Below, piece after piece: positions 825 through 22,500 of a stretch of DNA of 64,000 nt. This DNA is from Octopus bimaculoides. Taxonomy: Eukaryota. Made by a program: the position numbers and the translations under genes. Every line of letters begins with the position of its first letter. The first letter of the stretch is position 1. The notes below the pieces were generated by a model. The model was not told the DNA's origin, ran no database searches, and was given only the letters and a program-made list of their open reading frames with translations. The stretch spans positions 27,708,646 to 27,772,645 of the forward strand of contig NC_069002.1 of the NCBI RefSeq assembly GCF_001194135.2. The letters are read 5' to 3'.

Positions 825-1980
825 CATTTTTTTTTGCTTTCCATGAATTTTTCATGGGTTCAGCTAGTTAATCGTTAATTGCTGAAGAAGTATTTATCAA
901 TCAATAATTTTACTAATAAGATGAATGGCTGATTCAGCCATGCAGACCTATGTTTGGTGTTGGATTTAGCTGTGCCTACCTCCACCAGCAAGCAGAGATG
1001 CTTCACTGTTGCCCTCTATATGCTATATATCTGTTCTAATATTATTTCAACTTATTTCCTGATTCTTGTAAATTTGTTTACATTTCCCCTTTAGGACAAA
1101 TCTCAGTGAATGCACAAATGATGTCTGGCAAGCATCAGTAAATAACTGGTATGCTGACATCCATAAACAAAGGCTTGAGCTCTTGTTAGACTCATCACTC
1201 CAGTGGAATAGCTTTGAGTGAGGAGACACAATAAAGTCAAAAGACTGCAGTATCTTAAAGTACCCTTGCACCTGTGAAGCAGTGAATCACATGTATTGTG
1301 AAGCAGTGAATCACATGTATTATGAACACACATTGTCTAAAAGGAGGTGTTCTCTAATGATGAAAAACAATAGCCATAAGATATTCATGTCTAAATCTGC
1401 CAGGACTTATTAAGAATTGAAATGTTATTGTTTGGATTCTTGCTGATCTGCATGCTCCCAATAAATTGCTCTTTCTCTCATATATGTATAACATACTAAA
1501 CCATTAAGTATTATGTAAAATTATCATAACCCTTTAGTGTTTAAACCAGCCACATCTGGCCCAAATACTCTATATGTTTTATATTCAAACCAGCCATTTC
1601 TAGCCTCTCATACCTAACCTACATTGACAGTGTAAAAATAAACAATCACATCACTGAAACGTCAAAGTTATAAGATAATGCATGATTAATGCAAAACAAT
1701 TTGTGTGAAAAAGCATTGCATTTAATAAAGTAATCTGAACAGTATAGGGTTAAAACAGCGAGCTGGCAGAATCGTTAGCACGCCAGGCGAAATATCACTA
1801 AACATTTCACCCAGCGCTACATTCTGAGTTCAAATTCCACTGAGGTTGACTTTGCCTTTCATTCTTTCAGGGTCAACAAAATAAGTACCAGGTATGCACT
1901 GGGATCGATGTAACTGATTATTTCCTTCTCTCAAAATTTCAGGCCTTGTGCCTATAGCAGAAAAGATTATGTGAAATTAC

Positions 1981-2073
1981 CTTGATGATAAAATTTCCTG
2001 AAGCAAGTGATGGGTGCAAAACCAAATGATCAGCAACAGAGCCATTGCTGGTGAATGTAAGAACATGGCAATC
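1981..2073 (-). CDS. UBR4: UBR4 exon ([31 protein letters not shown])
   Basis: ctatag| and |gtaatt; 93 nt, phase 0 to 0; matches [31 protein letters not shown]. Confidence 0.98.
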
Positions 2074-2192
2074 CTATAGACAAAGAGAAGAAATGGAATT
2101 CAACAACAAATATAAAGAGAAACAAAAAATAAAAGTAAGAAGTATTTGAAAAAGAGAAAATTTAAATACAGGGCACTGAAAGTAAACTTAGA

Positions 2193-2227
<35 letters not shown>

Positions 2228-5200
2228 NNNNNNNNNNNNNNNNNNNNNNNNNNNNNNNNNNNNNNNNNNNNNNNNNNNNNNNNNNNNNNNNNNNNNNNNN
2301 NNNNNNNNNNNNNNNNNNNNNNNNNNNNNNNNNNNNNNNNNNNNNNNNNNNNNNNNNNNNNNNNNNNNNNNNNNNNNNNNNNNNNNNNNNNNNNNNNNNN
2401 NNNNNNNNNNNNNNNNNNNNNNNNNNNNNNNNNNNNNNNNNNNNNNNNNNNNNNNNNNNNNNNNNNNNNNNNNNNNNNNNNNNNNNNNNNNNNNNNNNNN
2501 NNNNNNNNNNNNNNNNNNNNNNNNNNNNNNNNNNNNNNNNNNNNNNNNNNNNNNNNNNNNNNNNNNNNNNNNNNNNNNNNNNNNNNNNNNNNNNNNNNNN
2601 NNNNNNNNNNNNNNNNNNNNNNNNNNNNNNNNNNNNNNNNNNNNNNNNNNNNNNNNNNNNNNNNNNNNNNNNNNNNNNNNNNNNNNNNNNNNNNNNNNNN
2701 NNNNNNNNNNNNNNNNNNNNNNNNNNNNNNNNNNNNNNNNNNNNNNNNNNNNNNNNNNNNNNNNNNNNNNNNNNNNNNNNNNNNNNNNNNNNNNNNNNNN
2801 NNNNNNNNNNNNNNNNNNNNNNNNNNNNNNNNNNNNNNNNNNNNNNNNNNNNNNNNNNNNNNNNNNNNNNNNNNNNNNNNNNNNNNNNNNNNNNNNNNNN
2901 NNNNNNNNNNNNNNNNNNNNNNNNNNNNNNNNNNNNNNNNNNNNNNNNNNNNNNNNNNNNNNNNNNNNNNNNNNNNNNNNNNNNNNNNNNNNNNNNNNNN
3001 NNNNNNNNNNNNNNNNNNNNNNNNNNNNNNNNNNNNNNNNNNNNNNNNNNNNNNNNNNNNNNNNNNNNNNNNNTAGCAAATCACAGAATATAATAAAAGA
3101 ACTTAATAAAGATTATCAAGACGAAATGAAATAAAAAGAGGAAATTTAAGATTTAAAAAAAAAAAAAAAAAAAGAATTAAAAATTTTTTTTTTAAATGAA
3201 ACTTAAAGCATATTCATATTGAAATCTATGAAGCACATGATTGAGATGAGCAGATTGTAGGCTGCAAACACCTCCAGTGGAATTATAACATGCACTCAAC
3301 AAATGGCAACTGAGATGCCATTCCAGAAAAACTTGGCATTAGTGATAATGCAGAAAGCATGACTGCTACAATCGACAAACGTCAACACAAATCTGTAATG
3401 AACAGAGCACAATTGGCAATACAAAATAGCTAGCAATGACCAGAAGTCGCTTAACCCAATAGACAATAAAATAAAATACTAAAAGGTTTGGGGAGGGGGT
3501 GTAAATCTAGATTTTGAACCACTTTAAAAATGTAATTAAAAAATTTTTTTTTTATCAGACTTATAAAAATATGGTTTAAATCATTAGCCTAATTTAAGAT
3601 ATTGCTTAATCAATGAGTCTGATTTCTTTTGTTTTGTATTTTACAGGAATGGTTAAGGAAAAAAAAAGAAGTTTTTAATTTCTGACTATGTGTGTAATTC
3701 TTCTTGAGCTCAGCAGTTCACAAAATGACAAGTACTAGCCCCCCCCCCCATACTACCCCCCATACATACACAGATACACAAAATCTGTAAAGATTTTTGT
3801 TCTCTGCCTCCATAATAATAATAAGCTTCATCATCATCACTGTTTTTTAACATCCACTTTTCCATGCTTGCATGGGTCAGATGGAATTAAGGCAGATTTT
3901 CTATAGCTTGATGCTCTTCCTTTCACTAACCCTCACCTGTTTTCAAACAAGTTCATATTTCCTCATTGCTAGACAAGTTTTTCACAGAAGTCGAGAAACA
4001 AACATAGCTTGTATGATGATGATGATGATGATGATGTACATGTCCACCCATCACATAATGTCGAGGTAAGAGCAAACACAAAAGATCTTTGTTTTCTTCC
4101 AACCACAAATTTCCATTTGAAAATTTTCAGAAAATATACTTTTGATACAGTTTTGCATGCTAATGACGAGCATCACATTCATTATCTTGGAGAATTTATA
4201 ATAAAGAAGATAGAAGCATTTAAAATTGTGTTTTAAGCCAAAATGAATGCGATATTCGTCATCAGCATGCAAAACTACATCTGTGTAGAAAATATTTAGA
4301 AATAATCCATTGAGAATTGCAAAAAAAAATCTTCAGTTGGTTGGAAGAAAACGAAAAAGATCCAACATAAACACACATATACAACAGGTTTCCTTGAGTT
4401 TTCATCTATCAAATTAGCTTCCATGGCCTTGGTCGGCCCAAAGCCATAACAGAAGACACTTGTCCAAGGTGATGCGCAGTGGAACCGAACCCAAAACCAC
4501 ATTTAAGAAGCTTGCTTCAGAACAACATGGTTTTTAGTTCGGTACCATTGTGGAGGAACTTAGGCAAGGTCTTCTACTATAATCCGAGGACAACCAAAGC
4601 CTTGTGAAAGGATCTCGTACATGGAAATCGAAAGAAGTCCATCATTATATATATATATATATATATATATNNNNNNNNNNNNNNNNNNNNNNNNNNNNNN
4701 NNNNNNNNNNNNNNNNNNNNNNNNNNNNNNNNNNNNNNNNNNNNNNNNNNNNNNNNNNNNNNNNNNNNNNNNNNNNNNNNNNNNNNNNNNNNNNNNNNNN
4801 NNNNNNNNNNNNNNNNNNNNNNNNNNNNNNNNNNNATATATATGCGCATGTGTGTGTTCATATTTATGTTCATGTCTCCTTACCTGGCCATCATGCCAAA
4901 TAATTGCTTCACCACAGTAGTGGTTTCTATTCGGAATAGAAACCCACATGCACTTTTCAAATTGGTAAAACAACAATTTCTTTAATCAAAGACCTGTAAT
5001 TCATAATAAACCAAACTTTCACAGATTCACATCAGAGTTACTACTAGCTAATCACTGCAAGCCAAACTGAACCAATACACTGGTTCTCCTCTCGCACACA
5101 CCATGCCTATTTCTCTCACTTCCAACCAACCAAACTCTGGTTAAATAACCACTTCACTATTCCTACCTAGAAATGCAGTCCTCTGGAACTCCATGCTCAG

Positions 5201-6790
5201 GTCTTCACAGAGAAGCTCAAACCAAATGTTAATAGTGTCAACATCAGTCTATGAGGACCATCAAAGATGGCAAGTGTAGAGATACTGCAACTCCTCCAAC
5301 ATGATTAGAGGTGGGGAGGGCAAAACTAAAAAACTTGAACAGTAAGTAGGGTCTTTAATCTTCTCTGTAGAAATGAGAACATTCTGCTACAATCTATTAA
5401 TCCTTTAACCCTTCAGCATTCAGATTACTGTCAAACGTAATGCTTATTTATTCACATTGTTTCCAATTAATCGTGTATTATTTCCTAGTTATTATTTCGA
5501 TGGTGTGACTGTTTATTTTTAGAATGAAATTGCATAGTAGGAGTGAGAGACTGCATCTGACCAGAATGAACATGAAGCTGGTTGGATATTTGGGCTGGAC
5601 ACGGCCAGTTTATATGTTAAAGGGTTAACATTGAGAAACTAAACAACTATTTTCATTGCTTAGACTAAAAAGGCGGAAAAGTAGCAGTTTAATTAGTTTA
5701 TAGGTGACAATTTCCAAATGAATAATTAAACCAATAATTGTAAATTTATTGACTACTTTTTTATGTATTAATAAAAGAATTGAAATTTATTTCCTTTATT
5801 CTTCAATTTATAACAACAAGAGGAGTAGGGGTGGGGAATGCACAATTTCAATTCAAATCTGATTTTACTTTATAGGTAATTTAATCTACCCTTTATTTCA
5901 TGTGACAGCAGATATGAGCGACTTAAGCAAATATTTATATTATTTCTAATATTTAGAGAGAAAACACTGCATATCTCATCATTTAGAACAGAAATTTAAA
6001 AAGCCAATGATGAAAAAAATAAATATCCAGAACATCACTCACATAAAATATCTTTAAAAGCAAAAATTTAATTCATAATCTATCCAAATAGAAGTATACC
6101 AGAGATGAACTTGCCAGGCAAATATTTTGATCCGAGACCATGTGTTAAACAATTACTGCATGGGAGACACATATTTGAAATTCAAAAACACAGACACTTA
6201 GCTTCGCTTAAACCTTTATTAGTTGATGTTAATATTTTCAGTGCACCAACTGCAACCTGGTCACTGACACAGATCCACTGCAGTAGGACTATGTCAGTGA
6301 CCAGGTCCAAAACGGTATAATGAACAGTTCCATACCTAATAATAAAATGTTTATGTGAAGTTAAAAGTCTTTGTGTATTTTTGAATGACTAACAAGTGTC
6401 TTCCATGCTGTAAGTGAAGTGGAATAGTCAAGACTCAATTAGAAAACCTAATTAGAAAATAATTAGTTAAAACATTGCAACAGTGAAGAAGTGCTCCTTT
6501 GTTGATAGCAAACAAACGATATCCAAGTGCATTGAAAAACAAACTTATGAGAAATGAGAAGAAACGCTTAAAGACTGCAGCTGCTTCTAACGAGATATGT
6601 AAATAATTGTAATATTGTCATTGAGGCAAAGACATATATAAATAATCTGTCAGATGTGATGACCTTCACATTACTTTTTATGAGCAAGAGCTTGACCGGT
6701 CAAAAGCAAATATAAACAGACAAAAAGAAAAGCTGGAAGTCAACACACACACACACACAGAGTCCCTCTCTAGTTCTCTTTCTCTGTCTC

Positions 6791-6851
<61 letters not shown>

Positions 6852-9800
6852 TATTTGCATCATGTACAGAAGAGATCTGGCTGTGTAGTAAGAAGCTTGG
6901 TTACCAACCACATGGTTCTGGGTTCAGTCCTACTGCATGACACCTTGGGCAAGTGTCTTCTACTATAGCCTCGGGCCAACCAAAGCCTTGTGAGTGAATT
7001 ACGTAGAGAGAAACTGAAAGAAGCCTTGTGTGCATGTGTGTGTTTGTCCCCCCCCCCCACCATTGCTTGACAACTGATGTTGGTGTGTTTATGTCCCTAT
7101 AACTTAGCAGTTTGGCAAAAGAGACCCATAGGATAAGTACTAGGCTAACAAAGAATAAGTCCTGAAGTCAATTTCTTCAACTAAAAAAGCCTTTAAGGCG
7201 GTGTTCCATCATAGCTGCAGTCAAATGATTGAAACGTGTAACAGAATAAAAGAATTAATACGTCTAGACCAGTTCAAATGCAAAATATGCTAGTCACAGT
7301 AGTGTATGTTGAAGGACAAAAACATCTCTCTCTAATGATGACAGTGTGTTCAACACACCAGACTTATTGGCACAGAGGGTCCTGGGACACTGGTGTTCCA
7401 ACATGTGTCACATCAGCTAGAAGTAACCTAGGCCTTTGAGTCTAGCCAAGCAGCTAGCCTTTGTTTATGCTTCCTACAACCAAAATGTTTGCTGATCAGT
7501 GCTTATCCGTTAACTGATATAGAATCATTAGTTGCACTTTGTAAAGCGAGAACATAATCATCATCATTTAACATCCATTTTCCATACTGGAATGGGTTGG
7601 ACGGTTTGACTGAAAACTGGTAAGCTGCACCAGGTTCCAATCTGATTTGGAATGGTTTCTGTAGCTAGATGCCCTTCCTAACACCAACCACTCCAAGAGT
7701 GTAGTGGGTGCTTTTGCATGGCAATGGCACAAGTACCAGTTACGTAACACTAGCATCAGCCACAACTACAAACCTCACTTGGCTTGACGGGTCTTTTCAA
7801 GCACGGTATTTTGCCAAAGATCTCAGTCACTTGTCACTGGCCCCGTCATTCAGGCAGATTCAAACGCAAAATATGCTAGTATACACATAGGGAGACCTAC
7901 ATATACATATATGCTTTATGAGTGTGTATGTATATATACACATAAACATATACAAAAAACATTTTCCATTATATAAACACGTTTTGTAAACACATTTTAC
8001 AAGTGTGTTACATATTTAATATTTGTACAGCATTTATATAAAAATACACATTACACACACACACACACCATTCATTCCTTAAGTTTTACTTTTTTCATTC
8101 TACTTGCCTTCTAAAACTGGTGGACAATTTTGTCGAGGAGTAATGTGAATAACCTTTGCTGTGTGTGTAGCTTAGCACCTCCTCATGCAAAGCACAAAAT
8201 GTAAACACACACACACACACACACACATAATTGGGCTTCCCTACAGTTTCAGTCTTACCTAAGAAATATGGTCACCATAATAGAAAAACAAGGTATGTGT
8301 GTAGAAAATAGCTATTTCTGATTCTCTTTACTCTTTTATTTGTTTTAGTCATTTGACTGTAGCCATGCTGGAGCATTGCCTTTAGTCAAGCAAATCGACC
8401 CCAGGACTTATTCTTTGTAAGTCTAGTACTTATTCTATCGATCTCTTTTGCCAAACCGCTAAGTTACGGGGACGTAAACACACCAGCATCGGTTGTCAAG
8501 CGATGTTTGGAGGACAAACAGACACACAAACATATACACACACATACACATATATATACATATATACGACGGGCTTCTTTCAGTTTCCATCTATCAAATC
8601 CACTCACAAGGCTTTGGTCGGCTCGAGGCTATAGTAGAAGACACTTGCCCAAGGTGCCACGCAGTGGGACTGAACCTGGAACCATGTGATTCGTAAGCAA
8701 GCTAGTTACCACACAGCCACTCCTACGGCTATTCTGTATCATTTTAAATTCACTTCCTTCCCAAAACAGCTGAAATCAAGTTGTCTTTCACTTAGGTATC
8801 AACACCTTGATCTGTTACCTTGGCATAAGGTTCTTTCTAGAATACAAGTAGAAGGCCTGAAATTTTGATTTGGGGGTGGGTGGGTTAATAGTCGATTACA
8901 TCAACCCCACTACCTGACAGGTACTTATTTTATTGACCCTGAAAGGATGAAAAGCAAAACCAAACTCAGCGGGATGTGAACTCAGGATCTTAAAGCCAGA
9001 AGAAATGCTGCTCAACATTCTGTCTGCTGTCCTAACGATTAGGCCAACTTGCCATCGTTATCTTGGCATTAAAATGGGAGGAAGTTCAGCATACAATATG
9101 GATTAATAAATCCGGAACATGTAAGGAAATTACAGAGGTAAGGGCATTGATTAAATGGAGAAAGGGGATTAGCAAACTGAAGGTGTGTAATTTACTTTGT
9201 ACATGTAACATCTGAAATGTTTTTCTGTTATTCTTTTCCTTGTTTCAGTCATTTGACTGTGGCCATGCTGGAGCACCGCCTTTAGTCAAGCTAATCGACC
9301 CCAGGACTTATTATTTGTAAGCCTAGTACTTATTCTATTGATCTCTTTTGCCAAACTGCTAAACTACGGGGACATAAACACACCAGCATTGGTTGTCAAG
9401 CCATGTTGGGAGGACAAATACAGACACACACACACATATATATATACACACACACACAACGGGCTTCTTTCAGTTTCCGTCTACCAAATCCACTCAGAAG
9501 GTTTTGGTCGGCCCGAGGCTATAGTAGAAGACACTTACCCAAGGTGCCATACAGTGGGACTGAACCCGGAACCGTGTGGTTGGTAAGCAAGCTACTTACC
9601 ACACAGCCACTCCTGTGCCTATGTTCGTTAATTATTTATTCTCAACTTTCATCATTATCATTTTTTAATGTTCACTTTCCCAGGTTTGTACGGGAATGAA
9701 GGTTACTTCTACAGTTAGATGTCCCTCCTGTTTCCAAGCAAGATAATATTCCCCCATGGCCTGACATGTTTTTGCAGACTATTAGACATGTATGACAATG

Positions 9801-12800
9801 ACACTCCTTTACAACTACCATGTGATGTCAGAACAAGGAAATCCACTCACACATATATGACAGGTTGTTTCCACTGAAGAGGCTGCATTTGACTCAAGAG
9901 TTATAGTAGAAGACACCTGCCTAAAGTGCCACATGGTGGGACTGAATCCAGAACCATGTGGTTCAGTGATAAATTTCTAAACCACACACTCACATCTGTG
10001 CCTCCTATATATCATACTAGCAGAGGCACCCGGCGTTGCTCGGGAATGAAATTTTTGCTTATATACTTGAAGAAAAAAAGGCAAAATATGCTGTATAGAA
10101 ATTTGAGGACATTCTGTAGATGGACTCTCAGATGTATGATGGCTGGGCGCCTCTCATGAATGGGGAAAATTGAAGATGTGCCAAAAAGCCTCATTGGTAC
10201 TTGGAAACTTTTACGAAAATTAAAATGGGGATCGTTGCCAGTGCCCATGGGCTGGCTCGTGTGCGGGNNNNNNNNNNNNNNNNNNNNNNNNNNNNNNNNN
10301 NNNNNNNNNNNNNNNNNNNNNNNNNNNNNNNNNNNNNNNNNNNNNNNNNNNNNNNNNNNNNNNNNNNNNNNNNNNNNNNNNNNNNNNNNNNNNNNNNNNN
10401 NNNNNNNNNNNNNNNNNNNNNNNNNNNNNNNNNNNNNNNNNNNNNNNNNNNNNNNNNNNNNNNNNNNNNNNNNNNNNNNNNNNNNNNNNNNNNNNNNNNN
10501 NNNNNNNNNNNNNNNNNNNNNNNNNNNNNNNNNNNNNNNNNNNNNNNNNNNNNNNNNNNNNNNNNNNNNNNNNNNNNNNNNNNNNNNNNNNNNNNNNNNN
10601 NNNNNNNNNNNNNNNNNNNNNNNNNNNNNNNNNNNNNNNNNNNNNNNNNNNNNNNNNNNNNNNNNNNNNNNNNNNNNNNNNNNNNNNNNNNNNNNNNNNN
10701 NNNNNNNNNNNNNNNNNNNNNNNNNNNNNNNNNNNNNNNNNNNNNNNNNNNNNNNNNNNNNNNNNNNNNNNNNNNNNNNNNNNNNNNNNNNNNNNNNNNN
10801 NNNNNNNNNNNNNNNNNNNNNNNNNNNNNNNNNNNNNNNNNNNNNNNNNNNNNNNNNNNNNNNNNNNNNNNNNNNNNNNNNNNNNNNNNNNNNNNNNNNN
10901 NNNNNNNNNNNNNNNNNNNNNNNNNNNNNNNNNNNNNNNNNNNNNNNNNNNNNNNNNNNNNNNNNNNNNNNNNNNNNNNNNNNNNNNNNNNNAGACAGAG
11001 TGAGAGAGCGGTGTGTATGTAGTATTTACTCTCTCTCTCTCTCATACACACTCACACACACACTCACACACAAAATAGAAAGTGAAGCTTTTTGCGGTTT
11101 GTTACGTCAATACCGGAAGTTGACATTGAGGAACCTTTTTAAAGAAGTGAATCTTAAATATAAAGCAATATTATTTCATTTTAATTTAAAAAAAATCAAA
11201 TGAAGAGCCTAAGATTTATCCGAGGTCAAATTATTCATGCATTACAAGTATGGAAGCATTTGGTGAAGTCGATTTCACGTGAAAAGCGATTACACACACA
11301 TCTCTGTTTTATATATAGTATAGATATAACAATTTATATTGGGTCATCCCATAAATAATGCGGTTTTATACAATTGCATGAACTAAAAGTCGGAGGGGGA
11401 CAGGATAAACTACCTGCATCAACTTGCTATAAAAGCAAGGAGTAATTTTACCATGTTCTTATTCTTAGTGCAAGTTTTGAAGAGTGCAGTTTGATTTTAA
11501 CAGTTATTTTTTCAAAGCTGTAATGGAAATGACAAAGGAGCATATTCGGCATATTTTGCTTTATGAGTTCAATAAAGGCATCAATGCAACGCAAAGTGCA
11601 AGGAATATTAATGCAGTATATGGGGTTCCAGAAATTCCGAGACAGAAACTACAGCCTAGAAGGCCAGCCTCATCCTGGAAGATCTGTAGAGCTCAACAAG
11701 GAAGTCCTGCAAACCCTGGGGGAACAAAATCCCATCGTAGCTGTTGAGGAACTAACAGACAAGCTTGGATTTGGTCATTCAACCATTCATTGACACCTGC
11801 ATGCCATTGGAAAAGTCAGCAAATTGGGTTAATGGGTTCCTCACAAACTTTCTGAGTCTAATCATGCACAGAGAGTGAATGTGTGCTCTTCTTTGCTGTC
11901 ACGTGTCACGAATGAACCTTTTTTGGACTGAATAGTGACAGGTGATGAGAAATGGGTTCTCTATAAAAATATCAGACGTCAAAGAGAGTGGGTAGGGAAA
12001 GGAGAAACACTGGCACACCAGGCTAAAGAAGATCTTCACCCATGTAAGGTGGTGTTATCTGTTTGGTGGGATATGAAAGGTTTAGTCCACTTTGAACTTT
12101 TAAATCCAAGCCAAACGATAACAACGGAGATCTAGTGCAAGCAACTTGAGTGGCTTAAGTCAGTGCTAGAAGAAAAACAGCCATCATTGGTTTCAAGATG
12201 AAAGGTGTTCTTCCATCAGGATAATGCTCGGCCACATACAGCGAGGATGACATTTCAAATGCCAGAGTAGTTTGAATGGTAAACGATGCCCACCCACCAT
12301 ATTTGCCAGACACTGCCCCATCTGATTAGCATTTATTCCACAGTCTTCAAAATCACTTGGAAGGAAAAAAATATGAATTCTGTAGACGAGGTCAGAACAG
12401 TACGAGAGGAGTATTTTTCACCATGGACAAGTGAATTTTGGAAGAGGGGCCCTGCAAATCTACCAGACAGATGGAAGAGCATTGTGGAAAATGAAGGGGA
12501 GTATATTTTAGATTAAAAAAGAACTTATTTTAATTTTGAAAAATAAAAGTAAAAAAAACACATTATTTATGGGATGACCCAATACATAACACAAATAATG
12601 AAAAATGCATACGTTATTTAATGCTATTGCTTTTTTTTTTTTTCTTTCATTATCATTTAACATCCATTTTTCCAAGTTTACATGAGTCTGAGGGAATTTG
12701 TTGAAGCAGATTTTCTATGGCTGGATGTCCTTTCTGTAGCCAACCCTCACTTCCTATTATTTCCAAGCAAGATAATATTTCCCTATGACCAGACATGTTT

Positions 12801-13510
12801 TTCACAGAAGACTGGAAGCAAGGTAGTATTTTCTCTTAGCTAGACAGGAAGATTCTAGATTGCATAGCTATGCCTGTGCCTGAAGGCACCTAATTAAAAA
12901 AAAAAAAAGGATCCCATTCCAATTAGTTAATGTATTACTAGCTTACACAGAGAGAACAATTAGAAGCGCAAGATTCTTTCTTAAAATGTGTAATCATGCA
13001 TGCAACCACATATTAGTAAAGACAAAGAACTTACAAGAATATAAGCCCAATATTTTTTAATAATTCACTTCGAAAGTGTATCAATACTGCTGACAAATTC
13101 AAAAGCTTCCTTCAACATAAAAAAAACCTTGTAATGGAGTGATTTCTATGATTACAAACATACAAAAACTAACGTGATCACACACAGGATCATAAATGAA
13201 CGCCCTGACCACAATGCTTCAGTCAGAGTTTTTATACAGAAAATCAAACACTATCTAACAATGTGTTAAAACTGATATCACCACCATCATTTAATGCTGG
13301 TATGGGTTGGACAGTCTGACAAGAACCAACTGCACCAAGCTCCAAGGTCTGCTTTAGCAAGGGCATCGAAGGTCATGCTAACACTAATCACTTTACAAAG
13401 TGTATGGGGTGCTTTTGTTTTTTTTGTGACACCAGCACTAATGAGGTCATCAAGTATATGTAAGACAAAACCCCTTAATTGAGTGAGCATAGTGTTAAAT
13501 GAGGTGAAAG

Positions 13511-13553
<43 letters not shown>

Positions 13554-16500
13554 GAGGAGGAGGAGGACACACAAGGTGAAAAACCCATAAAATCTATTAT
13601 AAACTGCAAACAAACTAAAAATGAAAGCCTCTAATTTCAATTAAATATAAGCATGAAATATAAGCAATACATTTGAATAATTTTCTTACGAACAATAACA
13701 TAAATGATTATGAAAAAATGTAACCAAAGTAATTTACATGCCTATGTCTAAAATAATCTATACTGATAAAACTTCAGCTTTCCATGCTCTTGCAATAGAA
13801 CACCTTATGCACATCGTCAGTACACAAAACAGGTAAATTAGCACAAAAGATCTGCATCAACATGTTAATCCTACAAAATATTAACTACTAAAAAAAGGAG
13901 ACAAAAGCAATTTTTAACTGCAACACGCAACACTTCCAGATGTACATAAAATAATGATCTATATAAAAACCAAAACAACACACACACACACATGGATACA
14001 CGCACGCACGACATCTCAAATTTTGACATCTCCACCTTCTGGCTCTGAAATATGAACATCTAAGTAAAAATGTTCTTAGACTCCTGAATATCTGTCTTAA
14101 GTATATTCAAACTATATTCAATTCATACTTTTAATCTTGATCCATTAAGCAAGAAATGAAGGCAAGTTTTGCAGAAATTAAAGCTTGTTAAGATTAATTG
14201 AAATATCAACTAGTTTCCTATTTTGCTTTCACGCTGTCTTAATCTATATGTCCTAAGTTGTTCACATGCATACTTTTCCACGCACACATTCTTGCATTAA
14301 GACCGAATTAAAAGGGTTTCAATGTTATTGGCTACCATCTGAAGGTAAATGCAACTATATCTACAAAAGTCAAAGTTATTAGTTCAAACAACTGCATTTT
14401 CTGCAAAAAAAAAACAAAAACAAAAAAAAAACTATAAAAATGTACAAAATTTAGTTAAATATTGTAGCAGAGTCTATACTTTTAATATCACCCATTAACC
14501 ATCCAGAAGCAAAAGTTGTTCCCATTATACATACATNNNNNNNNNNNNNNNNNNNNNNNNNNNTATATATATATATATATTGTACTCTAGTGTGAGAGAG
14601 AATACGCTAAGTGTTATATTACTTACTCAGCCTAAATCAATTTAAGAAGGATTCTTAATTGTGTGTGTGTGTGTGTGTGTAAAAGTAAATAGCCTGCAAG
14701 GGATGTTTAAAAGTTAAAGAAAGCCTAGAAACAATTATTTGAAAATAGTGGGCACAAAATTTTGACCAAGAAATAACAGATCAATATTTTGTGCTGAGGC
14801 ACATATACACTGGAGAGATGCAGCAGTTTAAATAAGGATTGGCTACCAAATTTAATTATAGAAAAATTTTCAATTTGTATGAAAAAGTAGTTGGATTAAA
14901 TTTTCCATCCATAAGCCAACTTTAATCTTATAATGCATCCACCCGCTTCCAAATTGCAAAGTGCCAACCCTATTGATAGCAAAAGTTCTTCACAGCGTTT
15001 TAGCTGACAAGGAATCTGAGGAAGAGAAAATGTGGGCTAGAGAGAGATAACTTACCATCATGTTGATCACCTAGGAAAACAAAGACATAATCAAACAGAT
15101 TTTATTAGTAAAGATGAAATGCCTACCCTAGTGAAAGGTTTTAAAAAAAGTATTGTTTTGTCAAGGTTTTGAAGTGGGAACATTGAAGTTCAGCCAACTA
15201 AATGAGTAGTGTGTAAAAACAATCTAATGAAATAAGTCCTATCTTGATTTTATTATTATTATTATTATTATTATCATTATTATTATTATTATAACTCAGA
15301 ATTTATTTTTTTTAATCTATTAAAATGAACTTATACATAGGTGCTTTTAATTATATGAGCCAATTATAGTTCGTGGTGGAGTTCATGTATTTTTTACCTT
15401 GAACCAAGAATTTAAGAAACCAAATTCTTGAACTAACCTTTTAAATACTTAACTCACCGACAACCATCTCTCTCCACAACTCCCTTTCCCTGATTCCATT
15501 TCAGGTTTACTTATATTGAGGAATAAGGAGGGAGAGAGAGAGAGAGAGAAAGAGAAAAGAGGGGAGAGAGAACAATCCGTGGCCCTTGTAGGCCTTCTTG
15601 TTTATTTAGCTTTCCACTCTCATATTTTGGGGCTTTTCAAGACAATACACTGGACATCAACCCATCTGAAGCTGGTACAGGTTTCCAGCCAGTTGGAATG
15701 AATCTAAAGAAGTATTGTTGCATCTCGTCTCGCACATTTATTCAATCAGGATTTGAAATGATTACTTTGTACTTATCAGCTCTCCAACAATACTTTTATT
15801 TCGTTGTCTTCACTCACCCCACCCCACCATTTTTAATTACTCCTAAATGATTTTATTTCTCCATATTGCTGATTCATGTACAGTCTTGTATACTTACTTA
15901 GTGAGTCAGTCAACACTCTCTTGGCAAGAATAAACAAAGGACTGGTTTTGCTGATGAGGTCAGAACATGACCAAAACATGCTTGGAATTATCTCCAGTAC
16001 TTGATTAACTGATAAATACTAACAGCGATTGGCCAATATATTTTTTTTCCATCACAGAATATTTCAAGACTGATATTCATCATCTATTTTTACTGTTTAA
16101 CTGCCTCTACATTCTTACATCCTAATCAATGTTTTTATCACCATAACTCTTGCTCCCCTCTTGCAATTTTCCTGTCACTGCTACTTCTTCCATTCACCCC
16201 CTCAACCACACATTACAGAGGCGTGTGACCTCTCTAAACCTTATGGGGCACAAGGTGAACCTCACAAGTATTGACAGCACAATAAATCCAACCAGAACAT
16301 TCAGTAAATGCTCAGCAAGACAAGGACTCAAGACGGTCTCGGTGTTGTTGAGGGCATGACAACACTTTTGGAACCAGTACCACAATAAAGTGCTCTCAGT
16401 ACACACTGTAAAGCGGTTGGTGATACAAAAAGTATCAAGCCATAGCAAACAAAATCATAAAATGAAATGCATAAATGAGATATGGTCCTCTAACCTGTCT

Positions 16501-19500
16501 AACAGAACAGTAACTCCAAATAAGAACCGGTTCAAAACAAGATGACCCATCTAACCCATACCAGCATGGAAAAGCAGATGTAAAACAAGGATTTATGTTT
16601 AGTCAAATCAGTCTTTTTAATGCTCCCTGCATTAACTTACCTATTATTGGAGCAGCTTTGTGAAGATGTCTCAGTAATTTTTCTTGCAGCTACATTGATC
16701 ATTATTAATCGTTAGAATTAATAATAATGAATGTAGCTGCAAAGTATTATACTTGGACCTGTTTGTTTATCCCAACTCTTTGGCTGTAATCTATTTAAAA
16801 CCTATTTTCTTACATTCATTCGTATCCAACTTCAACAAAACTATCTCTTGCAAACAGAATTAAAGACCTTCAGTTTCCACCAAAGCAGTTCGTATCTATT
16901 TGACTTGGACAGCTAACACCAAAGGGAAGACATCTAATATGCAGAAGTAGAAATAATCCCTTGTCACTGTTGAAATGGTTTGTGCACCTACTAATCAACT
17001 TCATGTTTAGTAGAATGTTAAAAGAATGCTATGGTTATTTAGTTTGCCATTATTTATATAGAACAAAATTATTTATACAAAGGGATATCAGGCTCTATCG
17101 TCACTTTGAGACTCAAGAACAATGAGTCTTCTGACACCATTGCTCTTCACATTGAAAATCTTAGTTAATTCATTTATGATGACTGCTAATACTATCATTT
17201 CAAAACAGCCCTTATATCTTCAAAAGCAGTTAACAAAAGTAATTCCAGTATTGAAATAATTTTGTGTAATTAAAAAAAAAAGTTTTAAAAAAAGAGTAAA
17301 TTTGGGCAGTAATTTTATGGCCTTATCTTGTGTAACATATATGAACTGTTGTTTATTTGAGTTCTGATAGCAATTACAAGTTTTTAAACTAACTGTTTAT
17401 ATTCTGCATTTCATATAGTAAACCTATATAAAGAATGATAAGGAAAATATAATTATTCTGAGATAAAGAAAACAACAAAATTTAAGCCTCCAGAAACCCT
17501 GTGTCAGTCAGAGTAGTGGAGTGGCAACTACTGTTTAAAATCTACAAATGGGTCCTTGATAGAGGGTTGGGGGTCACTAACAATAAACATTAAAAAAAAA
17601 AATGTTTGATTCAACAAAATATATCAGGACATGTGGTAAAGACAAGAGATCTCTCACTGGTTTTTAATTTTGTAAAAGAGTGATAACAAAAAAAAAAAAA
17701 AAAAATTCCTAATGATCTTTCAAAATTCACAATTCATAGTAAAAACATTCAACAAACAAAAATGGCAAAAATTATAGTAAAAACATTCAACTGGAATTCT
17801 ATCTCATCAAAATAACCAAATCTTGATACATTAAATAAAAAAAACAAAAACAACAAACCCAGTTACACCACATATACAAGGTGGTATCAAAAGGTTCCAG
17901 AACTAGTTATGGTTCACAAACAATAACTTATTTACCAGAGTTTTAACATCTTCAGCAGCAATACACTGGTCCCAGCATTCCTACCACTTTTGGAATCAGG
18001 CCTGGAAATTGTTTTCCGTAAGCGAGTCAAGGACCTTCAGCGATTTGCTCTGGATCTCAACAATGGCGTTAAAATGGTGACCTTCAAGCTGCATTTTGCA
18101 TCTTGGCGAAGAGATGGAAGACTGCAGGTGTTAAATCTGGCAAATAGGGTGGGTGTGGAAGCGATACCATGTCTTCGGCAAAAAAAAACTCTGTGAAGAA
18201 GCCAATTCTTTGCTCCACAGATCCAGGCGCCTTCGCCAAATGTCCTCCCCTTTAAACGCTTCAAAACGCTGCAGTAGAATTCTTGATAAGCATATACGTG
18301 ATCACAAAAACAAACACAAAATTCACACTTTGCGAAGTAAATACAGTGACATCACTCGGCACACTGCCTCACGAAGGTCACTGCTAGCTCTCTCCCTGGG
18401 CACGCAACTGTTCTCACACAACAGGACTAGTCTGGAAACATTTTGATTTCACCTCGTATTTTATCCTCTCATCATATAAACTCATTAATGAACTTTTCCC
18501 AAAATAATCTAAGGAACACATTCAACTTCTTCATTTCTGTAATTTCAATAATTCATGATGCATTAACTAATGACTAACAACCTACACTTGTTTAGATCAT
18601 CTTTTCACTCTATTCACACACACACACACACACACAAACAAACAACAACAACTAAAAATCACATGAGACATTTAATTCTTGATATCAACCTGGTTTTATG
18701 ATACAAACTTTGTTTTAAAGCCATCTAAATTAAAACCCTCCATCAAAAGTTCGTTAATTTATGCTCCAAACACCAGCTTCATAATGACAGTTATTTTATT
18801 AAGTTCTCCTCATTATATTCGAAATTAATTCAAATAAAAGCAGTGCATTTAAACAGAAATATTGTAACAAAAGAGTCAACTCTTTTNNNNNNNNNNCAAA
18901 AGTTCGTTAATTTATGCTCCAAACACCAGCTTCATAATGACAGTTATTTTATTAAGTTCTCCTCATTATATTCGAAATTAATTCAAATAAAAGCAGTGCA
19001 TTTTTTAAAAAATGTTGTAACAAAAGGGTTGAGTGTAAAACATTTTATAATGAATTTGTTTTTGTTTGAAGTTCCAAAATTCAGAAACTTAAAGCTGATA
19101 TAATTTAGAATTCGCATATATTTCCCAGTGTCAATTTATAATCATCATGATTAACCCTTTAGCATTCATATTATTCTGTTAAATATATCTCATTTATTCA
19201 ATTGTTTTGTCTTAATCATGCATCATCTCATAACTGAGATTTTGACGATGTGATTGTTTCTTTATAGAATGACATTGTAGGGTAGGTGTGAGAGACCAGA
19301 TCTGGCTGGTTTGAACATAAAACAAGTAAAATATTTGGGCCAGATATGGCTGGTTTTAATGCTAAAGGGTTAATTTCAACTATTTCAAAAAGTTAATTAA
19401 TTAAAATTCCATTTCTGATGAAGAAACAATAATGTAAATCCTAACATACAACATGGCAAAGTTTGTCTCCTTTTTAATAGGCTTTAATCAGAATTCCAAT

Positions 19501-22500
19501 TCCATTTTAAAAAAATTAAACAATAATTAGTTTTAATTAAATCATCATCAGCCCCCGGACATTAGCCCTTTTGATGCCAACCCACCTCTGGTTCTGTAGT
19601 ACAAATGTCTTGTTTTCAAAAACACTAGCTTAATGATAACTAAGTTATTTTATAAAAGTCTTTGTTATATTTAAAATTAATTGAAAGAGACACAGAGCAT
19701 CTCAACAGAAAGATGATAACAAAAGGGGTTTAATGACTTGAGCCCTAGGACACACAGGGCTAGACACCCAGTTTTTATGAAGGTCACAACACTCCCTGAA
19801 CGAGACGGGTGTACTCATTAACAGCTGAGTGGGCTGGAGCAATGTGAAATTAAGTGTCTTGCTCATGAACACAACACACTGCCCTTTTAGGGAATCTAAA
19901 TCATGTGGTTGGGAGTGCAACACCCTAACCACTAAGCCATTATCAATTTAAAAAACCAAGTAATTTTCTGCAAAAATATTTAATCTCTCGCAAAACCTTC
20001 CATTTAAGTTGAAATTACTATTTATATGTTGAAGCCAAACATGCTAATTAAAGAAAATGCCTCTTTTGCTTTAAATACATTTTGCTTATGTCAACAAAAT
20101 GTTTTTCTCAATTTTAGGCTGCCTTTAGCTTATCTTTACTATTTTTATTAGCTAAAGTTAATTATTCCATGTTTACCTATTTATTAATATTTCTGATGTT
20201 AGCTAAATAGTTAGCTGACACCACAAACATACTAAAACATTTGCTGACCTTTGCACTATTGGCAACTGCAGCACTTACACAGTATGATTTGTATTATTAC
20301 ATATCTATATGGTTATACTAATTACAAAAGTGGGGCAGATTGACAGTCATTGCAGTGCTGGATAGAAGAATGGTCTGCAGTGTCTGTTACAACTATCTGC
20401 ACTCTGATTCATATCCCACTGAGTTCAACTTTACCTTTCATCCCTTCAGGATGGAAGGAAGGGACAAGTCCATGGCAGTGAACTGGCACAATTGTTAGAA
20501 CATCAAAAGAGGATGCCTTGCAGTATCTGTTCTGGCTTGGTGCAATCTGAGTTCAAATCCTGCTTGGATTAAAAAAAAAAAAATGCAGCTCTTGAAAAAC
20601 CAATGGGAACATAGTGTCCCTGGCTCCATCTGATGAACTGGTATCTCTATTACACCTATCTATTGTATATACCCTGAAGATATTGGGTACTAGATGTTAC
20701 TAACTTCCAAGATCAAGTCAGGCAACATTTCAAATTTCTCCCAATTAGTGGGAAGCCAATTCGTCTAGCTCTCTCCGAATCTCAGTGTTGCACTCGGTTC
20801 TTAGCTCTTTTACAATGATTTCAAAGAGTAGAACAAAATAGAGAGAACTGCAAGCAAGACTTGATGGCCCCTCAAGTGGACTACCCAAGAAGCAATCAAT
20901 CTTACATCAATTTTCCTAGCACCCACAACGATACTCAATACCTGAAACATGGAAAATGTCCATGAGCGTGGCCGTTGCCAGTACCGTGTGACTGGCCCTC
21001 GTGCGGGTGGCACGTAAAAGCACCCACTACACTCTCGGAGTGGTTGGCGTTAGGAAGGGCATCCAGCTGTAGAAACTCTGCCAGATCAGATTGGAGCCTG
21101 GTGCAGCCTTCTGGCTTGCCAGTCCTCAGTCAAATTGTCCAACCCATGCTAGCATGGAAAGCGGACGTTAAACGATGATGATATATATATATATAAACTA
21201 GCTAATTCTAACTGTTACACCAAAAAATACGGCAATGTCTTCACTGAAATCCAACTACCTTGATTGTACCCTGCACTCAATTTCTTATTTGTTTCTCTCC
21301 CACTCGCAAAACATAATATCCTACCACATAATTACACAAAGGTAAAAACGTTTTCATATAAAAAGGAAAAAACTCACTAACATACAACATTAACCAATAA
21401 ATTAAAGGAGAAAAAGGTAATATTCTAGCTTGCAGCCTTGAGTTAACTTGTGCACTGGAAATGTGACAGTTTTAGCAACCAACTTAAAATATATATATAT
21501 TTACTGTTTTCATTAATCACGCTAACAAAGATATGTGATTGTTACACTCAACCTTATTGTATATTGTGAATAAGGATAGCAAAACACTTGCTTACTAAAA
21601 ACCAATCGGTGTCTAATATATTATTGCATTTTAGTGCTATGAAAAAATTAATAGGTAAATGCGTGAGGGTTCGAACAGAAGATGTGTAAGCTCAATTTTC
21701 ACAGATAAAATTAGTAAAGATTCACCATAAAAATTGTAAAATGTAAAGTGTTTTCTCTTTATAAAATACAAAGTAATTTGAATAATATATATTAAAAGTA
21801 TCCAATGCTTACTGTAAGGGTTAACTTTTTTTTACTTGAATCTGCTTGCTTCAAGAGAGCTGATAACTGTAAAATAGTAATTTTTCCTTTCTCATGGCTA
21901 ACAGCCAAATGTTGTCTTTTACCATGGGGAGACGCTAAGACACACATAGCAACACGCCGCACCATATGAGCAGTGATCAGTTGACGGATGGCTTGACCTT
22001 GATCTCCACTATAGTTCATGCGGACATTTTCAAAGGCTCCTTCTTGTGAGCCCAAAGTTACAGTCTACAAAGAGAAAATAAAATTAGATTAAATTAAAAA
22101 AACACCAATCTCACCAATAAACTCTTATCTCATTTTTATTTTTCAAATACACAATTACATTCAAATAACATCAAATATGCTTTTAAGAAACAGATAACAT
22201 ACTTTTAAAGAACATTACCATTATATTACAATTAATACAAAAGTACCGCAAGGCATCCCATCTGAGGCGACAATAATTCCACCAATACAACATCTTGGAT
22301 TAGTGGGTTTTTGTTTTTTTTATTGACCCCTAAACAAATGAAAGACAAGGCTGACCCCAGCATACATATTTACTACTGATATGGAAAAGCAATTGGCTTT
22401 TGACCATGGCTTCCTAAGAACTGTTAAAACATTAGACAAGATATCTTAAGGTATTTGTTCCAGCTCTTTGTGTTATATATTAACTTTACACACATATATA

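What the first reader, a model, noticed from the sequence alone, without database searches (positions are those of the whole stretch)
6243..6318. Strand-specific pre-miRNA-like hairpin inside a UBR4 intron
On the minus strand, ACCUGGUCACUGACAUAGUCC-[UACUGCAGU]-GGAUCUGUGUCAGUGACCAGGU forms 21 bp with one G-U and one bulge. Below it is an 11-position lower stem with 8 pairs, 4 of them G-U and therefore possible only on the host-gene strand. This upper stem, small loop and ~11-bp lower stem is the geometry Microprocessor recognises. I saw no second copy in the window and do not recognise it as a conserved miRNA family. Coleoid cephalopods are known to have a large expansion of lineage-specific miRNAs, so a novel intronic miRNA is plausible.
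Basis: partly seen in the sequence, partly recalled or inferred. Interest (0 to 1): 0.72.

Follow-up and report, generated by a model that had tools for sequence, protein, structure and literature searches.

The report
Intronic foldback palindrome, not shown miRNA
The hairpin is real and very stable, but it is the tip of a roughly 270-base inverted repeat inside a UBR4 intron, one of at least seven such palindromes in this window, and nothing here shows that it makes a microRNA.

Summary
On the minus strand, 6243-6318 folds as described: a 21-bp upper stem (or 19 bp, a 2x2 internal loop and 4 bp), and a lower stem with 8 of 11 positions paired, 4 of them G-U. The fold energy is -47.2 kcal/mol (z -6.9), second most stable of 14,458 96-nt windows.

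The host is UBR4 on the minus strand, and the hairpin lies between two mapped exons.

The hairpin is the apex of an imperfect palindrome at 6150-6416 (69% self-complementary, E 2e-35). At least six other unrelated foldback palindromes lie in the same 59 kb of resolved sequence.

Several features argue against a standard Drosha substrate:
- The apical loop is 4-9 nt.
- The lower stem drops to about 0.3 pairing probability once 40 nt or more of flank is included.
- No CNNC or basal UG motif sits at the usual distance.
- The strand bias is not significant (16 G-U against 7 A-C, p 0.09) and almost vanishes for the whole palindrome (-102.7 against -98.7 kcal/mol).

There is no Rfam family, no match to the published octopus miRNA seeds that are held, no second copy, no target-site duplication and no reachable close relative.

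Most likely this is a neutral intronic inverted repeat that forms double-stranded RNA. A young miRNA is not excluded (about 8%).

The parts
6286..6306 (-). 5' arm of the upper stem (ACCUGGUCACUGACAUAGUCC), the hypothetical 5p strand
   Evidence: Pair probability is 1.0 in every context tested.
6277..6285 (-). Apical region UACUGCAGU. In the minimum-energy fold it is a UGCA tetraloop closed by 4 bp above a 2x2 internal loop.
6255..6276 (-). 3' arm of the upper stem (GGAUCUGUGUCAGUGACCAGGU), the hypothetical 3p strand
6307..6317 (-). 5' side of the weak lower stem (8 of 11 positions paired, 4 of them G-U)
   Evidence: Read by hand. Pair probability is 0.94-1.0 in isolation and about 0.3 with 40 nt or more of flank.
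6244..6254 (-). 3' side of the weak lower stem
6150..6416 (.). Whole imperfect foldback palindrome, with the hairpin at its apex. Weaker pairing may extend to about 6119 and 6442.
   Evidence: I1: 43-nt outer arms, 79% complementary. (self reverse-complement match 6150-6416, 69% over 272 columns, E 1.85e-35). (401-nt fold -121.8 kcal/mol, z -8.0). (109 matches, 16 G-U, 7 A-C, 29 transversion mismatches, 18 gap columns).
21813..22064 (-). Upstream UBR4 exon ([22 protein letters not shown]...KKLTLT), with donor ACA|GTAAGC in phase 0
1975..2073 (-). Downstream UBR4 exon ([31 protein letters not shown]), with acceptor tctatag| in phase 0

Best explanation
The hairpin is the best-preserved central part of an old imperfect inverted repeat of about 270 nt (a foldback palindrome). 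It lies in unique, non-coding sequence inside a large, repeat-laden intron of UBR4.

It arose at the DNA level, either by a local inverted duplication or template switch, or from a low-copy foldback element. The two arms have since diverged to about 65-69% identity. This step is inferred.

Because it sits on the sense strand of the intron, it is transcribed within the UBR4 pre-mRNA. There it folds into a long imperfect duplex with a rock-solid 19-21-bp tip. The fold is shown; transcription is inferred from the intronic position.

Its most likely fate is that of other intronic inverted repeats: binding by double-stranded-RNA proteins, above all ADAR hyper-editing if the animal is a cephalopod, followed by degradation with the intron. 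It has no dedicated small-RNA product. This step is also inferred.

The excess of G-U pairs on the sense strand is small. It is compatible with the sense-strand composition skew (T over A, G over C) seen across the window.
For: - **Palindrome.**
- **A population of similar palindromes.** At least six further unrelated foldback palindromes with tiny loops, each single-copy in the window, lie in the same 59 kb. This is about one strong hairpin per 7 kb. The published octopus set holds only about 160 miRNA genes (PMC9699675).
- **Literature on octopus.** Octopus has an exceptionally high fraction of loci that form long, nearly perfect dsRNA, and the strongest hyper-editing signal among the animals surveyed (PMC5625713).
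- **Non-coding.** The ORFs across the hairpin have no Pfam family. They have no relatives among 5.8 billion proteins and only two spurious tandem-repeat hits among 1.84 billion. The weak amino-acid resemblance to the missing exon is chance.
- **Poor Microprocessor features.** The loop is 4-9 nt. The lower stem is unstable in context. CNNC and UG motifs are absent at canonical positions.
- **Weak strand bias.** 16 against 7, p 0.09, and 14 against 10 in the other palindromes pooled. The whole palindrome folds almost equally on both strands. Sense-strand skew is T 20250 over A 17788 and G 10879 over C 10118, derived from the counts.
- **No known identity.** No Rfam family. No match to the seed sites of published octopus miRNAs in the held supplement text. 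No paper holds the arm sequences.
Against: - The centre holds a perfect 15-bp run and 19-21 bp in all, while the outer arms are only about 65% identical. A run that long is expected about 0.1 times by chance in arms of this divergence (my estimate). This hints at selection, or at repair acting near the loop.
- G-U pairs are concentrated in the central 50 positions (about 8 against 2 A-C). The central 96 nt is 9.4 kcal/mol more stable on the host-gene strand. Selection on the RNA would produce exactly this.
- Neither transcription, nor editing, nor small RNAs could be observed.
Confidence: 0.62

Rival explanations
1. It is a genuine, lineage-specific intronic miRNA gene. Microprocessor cuts near the base of the 21-bp upper stem, and Dicer removes the 8-9-nt apical part. 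The result is a 22-nt duplex (5p about ACCUGGUCACUGACAUAGUCCU, 3p about GGAUCUGUGUCAGUGACCAGGU) that loads into Argonaute. The decayed outer palindrome would be the remnant of the inverted duplication that gave birth to it.
For: - The hairpin has more than 16 bp and is extremely stable.
- It is more stable on the host strand.
- The central duplex is better preserved than the outer arms.
- It is single-copy and intronic in the sense orientation.
- Cephalopods gained many lineage-specific miRNAs, and the published set is stated to be an underestimate (PMC9699675).
Against: - The prior is low: eight or more comparable hairpins lie in this window alone.
- The loop is 4-9 nt, and the pre-miRNA would be only about 52-54 nt.
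- The lower stem has probability about 0.3 in context, and there is no single-stranded basal junction.
- There is no CNNC or UG motif at canonical distance (determinants as in PMC6298569).
- It is not among the published octopus seeds that are held and matches no Rfam family.
- It is absent from the orthologous interval of the one relative that spans it, which is distant (L008).
- Three of the four MirGeneDB criteria (PMC12539619) need reads and are untested.
Confidence: 0.08
2. It is a hairpin-RNA (endo-siRNA) locus. Dicer processes the long foldback directly into heterogeneous 21-22-nt siRNAs from along both arms, as with Drosophila hpRNA loci.
For: A long intramolecular duplex of about 130 bp lies on a transcribed strand.
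Against: - The outer arms are only about 65-69% complementary, with many bulges. This makes them a poor Dicer substrate outside the central 19-21 bp.
- No target with extended complementarity was seen in the window.
- Whether this pathway acts on such loci in molluscs is outside what I could test.
Confidence: 0.08
3. It is a copy of a miniature inverted-repeat or foldback transposon that is multi-copy elsewhere in the genome. The hairpin is simply the transposon's own palindrome.
For: - The whole element is palindromic.
- The intron is full of interspersed repeats and holds a Mos1-type mariner remnant.
- Several other palindromes are present.
Against: - There is only one copy in 64 kb, where common repeat families have 3 to more than 10 copies.
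- No target-site duplication lies within +/-4 nt of the ends.
- The window's palindromes are unrelated to each other.
- The fetched relatives' loci hold no similar sequence, and the ORFs across the hairpin have no relatives in the protein collections.
- The two-arm pattern has no hit in JGI metagenome contigs.
- The source genome itself could not be searched.
Confidence: 0.15
4. It is an assembly artefact: a chimeric foldback read or a mis-join in a gapped scaffold.
For: The window is a gapped scaffold with 12 runs of N.
Against: - The arms are old and diverged, with 29 transversion mismatches and 18 gap columns. Artefactual inverted duplications are near-perfect.
- The nearest gaps are at 4671-4835 and 10268-10992, well away from the element.
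Confidence: 0.02

Closest known systems
Intronic inverted repeats that form long dsRNA and are hyper-edited by ADAR (for example paired inverted Alu elements in primates, the palindromic repeat in Xenopus, and the abundant dsRNA-forming loci of octopus; PMC5625713)
   Same: It is a long, imperfect intramolecular duplex, non-coding, on the sense strand of an intron. It is one of many such structures in the same gene.
   Different: Here the two arms are contiguous, with a 4-9-nt spacer. They are not two copies of a recognisable interspersed repeat. Editing itself was not observed.
Canonical animal pre-miRNA hairpins (MirGeneDB definition), including the lineage-specific cephalopod miRNAs of Zolotarov et al. 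2022
   Same: It is an imperfect hairpin with more than 16 bp in a duplex of about 22 nt. It is intronic, in the sense orientation and single-copy.
   Different: The loop is very small and the lower stem is unstable. The duplex continues far below the presumed Drosha site. Canonical flanking motifs are absent. It matches no known family and none of the held published seeds. Expression data are lacking.
Young plant MIRNA loci born by inverted duplication (Allen et al. 2004 model; cited from my own knowledge)
   Same: It is a long foldback whose arms have decayed everywhere except a duplex of about 21 bp.
   Different: This is an animal genome. No parental or target gene sequence is recognisable in the arms. 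The better preservation of the centre is only marginally significant.
Miniature inverted-repeat or foldback transposable elements
   Same: Its size is about 270 nt and it is palindromic over its whole length.
   Different: It has no target-site duplication and no second copy in the window. Nothing similar is found in the loci fetched from relatives, and no related ORF is found in the protein collections.

Membership tests
Animal miRNA gene (MirGeneDB criteria, PMC12539619) | Imperfect hairpin precursor with at least 16 paired nucleotides in the stem | tested here: met
   19-21 bp upper stem with pair probability 1.0.
Animal miRNA gene (MirGeneDB criteria, PMC12539619) | 20-26-nt reads from both arms | not testable with these tools
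   No small-RNA data are available.
Animal miRNA gene (MirGeneDB criteria, PMC12539619) | 5' homogeneity of the reads | not testable with these tools
   No small-RNA data are available.
Animal miRNA gene (MirGeneDB criteria, PMC12539619) | 2-nt offsets left by Drosha and Dicer | not testable with these tools
   No small-RNA data are available.
Animal miRNA gene (cephalopod set of Zolotarov et al. 2022) | Present in a second species, or listed among the annotated genes | tested here: inconclusive
   - Arm sequences and 12 possible seed-site 8-mers are absent from the held supplement text, but two files were cut when stored.
- All relatives reachable are distant: exon DNA is 74-82% identical apart from one short 46-bp match at 93%, and introns do not align.
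- The hairpin is absent from the orthologous interval of L008.
Canonical Microprocessor substrate (PMC6298569) | Stem of about 35 bp ending at a single-stranded basal junction | tested here: inconclusive
   The stem forms in isolation. With 40 nt or more of flank, lower-stem probability is about 0.3 and the flanks join a longer duplex.
Canonical Microprocessor substrate (PMC6298569) | Basal UG, apical UGUG and downstream CNNC motifs (helpful, not obligatory; their weight in molluscs is unknown to me) | tested here: not met
   UG lies at -20 and -3, not at -14. CNNC lies at +27 and +30, not at about +16 to +18. The apex holds only GUG.
Known RNA family (Rfam 15) | Score at or above the gathering threshold | tested here: not met
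   The best match is mir-BART7 at 20.5 bits against a threshold of 70, E 1.1. Nothing in the whole window reaches a gathering score.
MITE or foldback transposon | Multiple dispersed copies | tested here: inconclusive
   It is single in the window and absent from the relatives' loci and the collections searched. The source genome could not be searched.
MITE or foldback transposon | Target-site duplication flanking terminal inverted repeats | tested here: not met
   No direct repeat of 3 nt or more lies within +/-4 nt of either end.
ADAR hyper-editing substrate (intramolecular dsRNA) | Long, largely paired duplex within one transcript | tested here: met
   The foldback is about 130 bp: -102.7 kcal/mol for 267 nt, and z -8.0 for 401 nt. 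It lies on the sense strand of a UBR4 intron.
ADAR hyper-editing substrate (intramolecular dsRNA) | Clusters of A-to-G mismatches in RNA-seq | not testable with these tools
   No RNA-seq data are available.

The most novel reading that the evidence does not exclude
The hairpin is a young, species- or genus-specific intronic miRNA caught soon after birth from an inverted duplication. Selection on the sense-strand RNA has kept the apical duplex of about 21 bp, tolerating only G-U changes, while the rest of the 270-nt foldback decays. This would be an animal counterpart of the plant 'inverted duplication' route to new miRNA genes.
Probability: 0.08. Interest if true: 0.45.

Novelty: new member of a known kind. 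Interest (0 to 1): 0.2.

Why it matters
As it stands, the finding is an ordinary example of the dsRNA-forming inverted repeats that crowd the introns of this genome. Its practical value is as a caution. In such a genome, hairpin stability and stem length alone pick out many palindromes per gene, so miRNA calls need read evidence and conservation.

If small-RNA data did show precise 5p and 3p stacks, the locus would document the birth of a miRNA from a local inverted duplication, with the parental foldback still visible.

If RNA-seq showed A-to-G clusters, it would be one more ADAR substrate inside a neural E3-ligase gene.

Tried and rejected
1. **Coding exon.** A weak tblastn hit (E 3.1) placed the missing 30-aa UBR4 exon on the hairpin. 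I rejected this. Splice phases do not fit. Relatives show a highly conserved RLxSAPxPFTVLS...NPCNEDxLAVxGLK that the hairpin ORF lacks. The DNA comparison with the relative's exon scores at the null level, 9 against 8.2 +/- 1.3.

2. **Known miRNA.** The Rfam evalue scan and the whole-window gathering scan found nothing. Arm sequences and 12 candidate seed-site 8-mers were not in the Zolotarov supplements. The MirGeneDB 3.0 paper has no held supplement. A full-text search for the arm sequences found nothing.

3. **Orthologous intron.**
 - Of the loci fetched, only L008 spans both flanking exons. There the interval is 2.9 kb against 19.7 kb here, and it shows no similarity to the palindrome.
 - Every relative is too distant for introns to align.
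 - The 483-kb ENA contig could not be walked to the right place, because only proteins returned by the capped search can be looked up.

4. **Multi-copy test through spurious ORFs.** No relatives were found. The representative search returned two tandem-repeat artefacts.

5. **Metagenome scan.** A JGI metagenome scan for the two-arm pattern gave 0 hits.

6. **Species identification.** Accession searches gave only that L008 comes from a South China Sea cold-seep metagenome. The coleoid origin of the window stays unverified.

Full report
**1. The observation**

- The 5' arm ACCUGGUCACUGACAUAGUCC is at 6306-6286.
- The 9-nt loop UACUGCAGU is at 6285-6277.
- The 3' arm GGAUCUGUGUCAGUGACCAGGU is at 6276-6255.

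Pairing by hand gives 15 perfect pairs, one U-G, two pairs, a bulged U and three pairs, so 21 bp with one G-U and one bulge. RNAfold prefers an equivalent form: 19 bp, a 2x2 internal loop, 4 bp and a UGCA tetraloop.

The 11 positions below the stem (6307-6317 and 6244-6254) hold 8 pairs, 4 of them G-U, as stated (read by hand).

The 96-nt fold has -47.2 kcal/mol against -24.7 +/- 3.3 for shuffles (z -6.9, 0 of 200 as good). The plus strand gives -37.8 kcal/mol. In a sliding scan of all 96-nt windows on both strands, the hairpin ranks second of 14,458 (mean -14.9, sd 6.4).

**2. The host gene**

Pfam places minus-strand translations in UBR4:
- 53077-53259 matches PF19423 positions 924-984.
- 38175-38405 matches PF19423 positions 1423-1492.
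- 27020-27172 matches the UBR-box zinc finger.

I also used a probe of human UBR4 written from memory, only to locate exons. It gives colinear tblastn hits from 63473 down to 1975 on the minus strand.

The hairpin lies between two exons. One ends at 21813 (KKLTLT, donor ACA|GTAAGC, phase 0). The other starts at 2073 (acceptor tctatag|, DCHVLTF, phase 0).

One conserved 30-aa exon that relatives place between these two (RLxSAPxPFTVLS...NPCNEDxLAVxGLK) is not in the resolved sequence. It probably sits in one of the assembly gaps.

A weak amino-acid hit put this exon on the hairpin. That hit is chance. The splice phases do not fit, and the DNA-level score against the relative's exon is at the null level.

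So 'sense strand of a UBR4 intron' is supported. The coleoid origin is not verified:
- The nearest sequences in the collections have 74-82% DNA identity in exons, apart from one short 46-bp match at 93%, and their introns do not align.
- One of them comes from a cold-seep metagenome whose samples include water above and fluids under the invertebrate communities (PMC9357000).

**3.

The hairpin is the apex of a much longer imperfect palindrome.
- The repeat finder reports 43-nt outer arms at 6150-6192 and 6374-6416, 79% complementary.
- A self reverse-complement BLAST spans 6150-6416 at 69% over 272 columns, E 1.85e-35.
- The 401-nt fold is one long foldback with z -8.0.
- Arm-against-arm alignment gives 109 matches, 16 G-U-type mismatches on the minus RNA, 7 A-C-type, 29 transversion mismatches and 18 gap columns.

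The palindrome is therefore old and is not an assembly artefact. It lies in a stretch (5642-6877) that is unique in the window and is flanked by SINE-like repeats with 3 to more than 10 copies. It has no target-site duplication.

**4. It is one of a population**

The same window holds at least six other foldback palindromes with tiny spacers:
- 617-757
- 16663-16763
- 25045-25195
- 37130-37199
- 42578-42810 (106-nt arms, 97% complementary)
- 46197-46297

They are unrelated to one another and single-copy in the window. Eight or more hairpins at or below about -37 kcal/mol lie on the sense strand within 59 kb of resolved sequence. The published octopus complement is about 160 miRNA genes (PMC9699675). 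If this density holds genome-wide, only a tiny fraction of such hairpins can be miRNA genes. That extrapolation is an inference.

The literature reports that octopus has an exceptionally high fraction of loci able to form long, nearly perfect dsRNA, and the strongest hyper-editing signal among the animals surveyed (PMC5625713). That fits what is seen here, if the window is indeed from an octopus.

**5. How miRNA-like is it?**

Of the MirGeneDB criteria (PMC12539619), only the structural one can be tested here, and it is met. The Microprocessor determinants (PMC6298569) fare poorly:
- The apical loop is 4 nt in the minimum-energy fold and at most 9 nt.
- A pre-miRNA would be only about 52-54 nt.
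- The lower stem has pair probabilities of 0.94-1.0 when folded alone but about 0.3 once 40 nt or more of flank is included. The flanks then form competing local hairpins and the long-range duplex.
- There is no single-stranded basal junction.
- UG lies at -20 and -3, and CNNC at +27 and +30, not at their canonical distances.

It also has no known identity:
- No Rfam family is matched.
- None of 12 possible seed-site 8-mers, and neither arm sequence, occurs in the held supplements of the octopus miRNA paper. This is a weak negative, because two files were cut when stored.
- No paper in the library holds the arm sequences.

**6. Strand specificity**

The central 96 nt is 9.4 kcal/mol more stable on the host strand. 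The whole palindrome, however, folds almost equally on both strands (-102.7 against -98.7 kcal/mol).
- The G-U to A-C ratio is 16:7 (p 0.09 two-sided), or 11:6 with tighter bounds.
- The palindrome at 25045-25195 shows 9:3.
- The other six palindromes pooled, including that one, show 14:10.

The sense strand of the whole window is T-rich over A and G-rich over C (from the counts). This skew favours G-U over A-C in sense-strand hairpins without any selection. That last point is an inference from established knowledge of transcription-associated substitution asymmetry.

**7. Is the centre specially preserved?**

At the DNA level the central 27 columns are 81% identical, against about 65% for the outer arms. 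That difference is not significant. A 15-bp perfect run is expected only about 0.1 times in arms this diverged (my estimates). The signal is suggestive, not decisive. It is the main reason I keep the miRNA reading alive, at about 8%.

**8. Conservation and copy number beyond the window**

- The ORFs across the hairpin have no relatives among 5.8 billion called proteins.
- They have only two spurious tandem-repeat hits among 1.84 billion representatives.
- The two-arm pattern is absent from JGI metagenome contigs.
- L008 is the one relative that spans both flanking exons. Its interval is 2.9 kb instead of 19.7 kb and shows no similarity to the palindrome.
- No close relative could be reached, so conservation within the genus stays untested.

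**9. Verdict**

The feature is real. It is best described as the tip of an old, single-copy foldback palindrome in a UBR4 intron. It forms long dsRNA in the pre-mRNA and is most likely a neutral by-product. If the animal is a cephalopod, it is probably an ADAR substrate.

The miRNA interpretation is neither shown nor excluded, but both its prior and its structural details are unfavourable. Interest is low (0.2). The kind is known.

Noticed in passing
window 25045-25195 (hairpin 25073-25168, minus strand): Another single-copy foldback palindrome. Its apex looks more like a pre-miRNA than the reported one: a stem of about 40 bp, a 9-nt loop, -46.7 kcal/mol on the host strand against -38.9 on the other, and G-U to A-C of 9:3.
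   Followed up: partly
window 42578-42810; 617-757; 46197-46297; 16663-16763; 37130-37199: Five more unrelated foldback palindromes with spacers of 3-21 nt. The first has 106-nt arms at 97% complementarity, so it is young. None has a convincing target-site duplication, and at 617-757 the flanks simply extend the palindrome. This points to a recurrent process in this genome that makes inverted duplications.
   Followed up: partly
window 2074-21812 (minus strand): The conserved 30-aa UBR4 exon (RLxSAPxPFTVLS...NPCNEDxLAVxGLK) is missing from the resolved sequence. It probably lies in an N gap (2228-3073, 4671-4835, 10268-10992, 14537-14563 or 18887-18896).
   Followed up: partly
window 1975-22064 compared with L008 1684-4896: The interval between the two flanking exons is 19.7 kb here but 2.9 kb in a distant relative recovered from a cold-seep metagenome. 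The excess is largely interspersed repeats.
   Followed up: partly
window 11481-12132 (+): Remnants of a Mos1-type mariner transposase (HTH_48 and Transposase_1), split over different frames. The ORF that follows at 12283-12513 (+) has no Pfam family.
   Followed up: partly
window 6878-7185, 8319-8750, 9218-9622, 47666-48000, 50603-51016 and others; 7553-7715 and others; 5404-5641 and others: At least three SINE-like interspersed repeat families are present, with 3 to more than 10 copies each at 72-92% identity. ARAGORN finds no tRNA-like head in them.
   Followed up: partly
window 6743-6846: An (AC)n/(GT)n pair forms a perfect 17-nt inverted repeat. It draws sub-threshold Rfam hits to mir-3149 and mir-297 (31 and 19 bits against thresholds of 100 and 90). 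This is low-complexity noise.
   Followed up: yes
whole window: The sense (minus) strand is richer in T than A (20250 against 17788) and in G than C (10879 against 10118). This is the composition skew typical of long transcribed introns.
   Followed up: no
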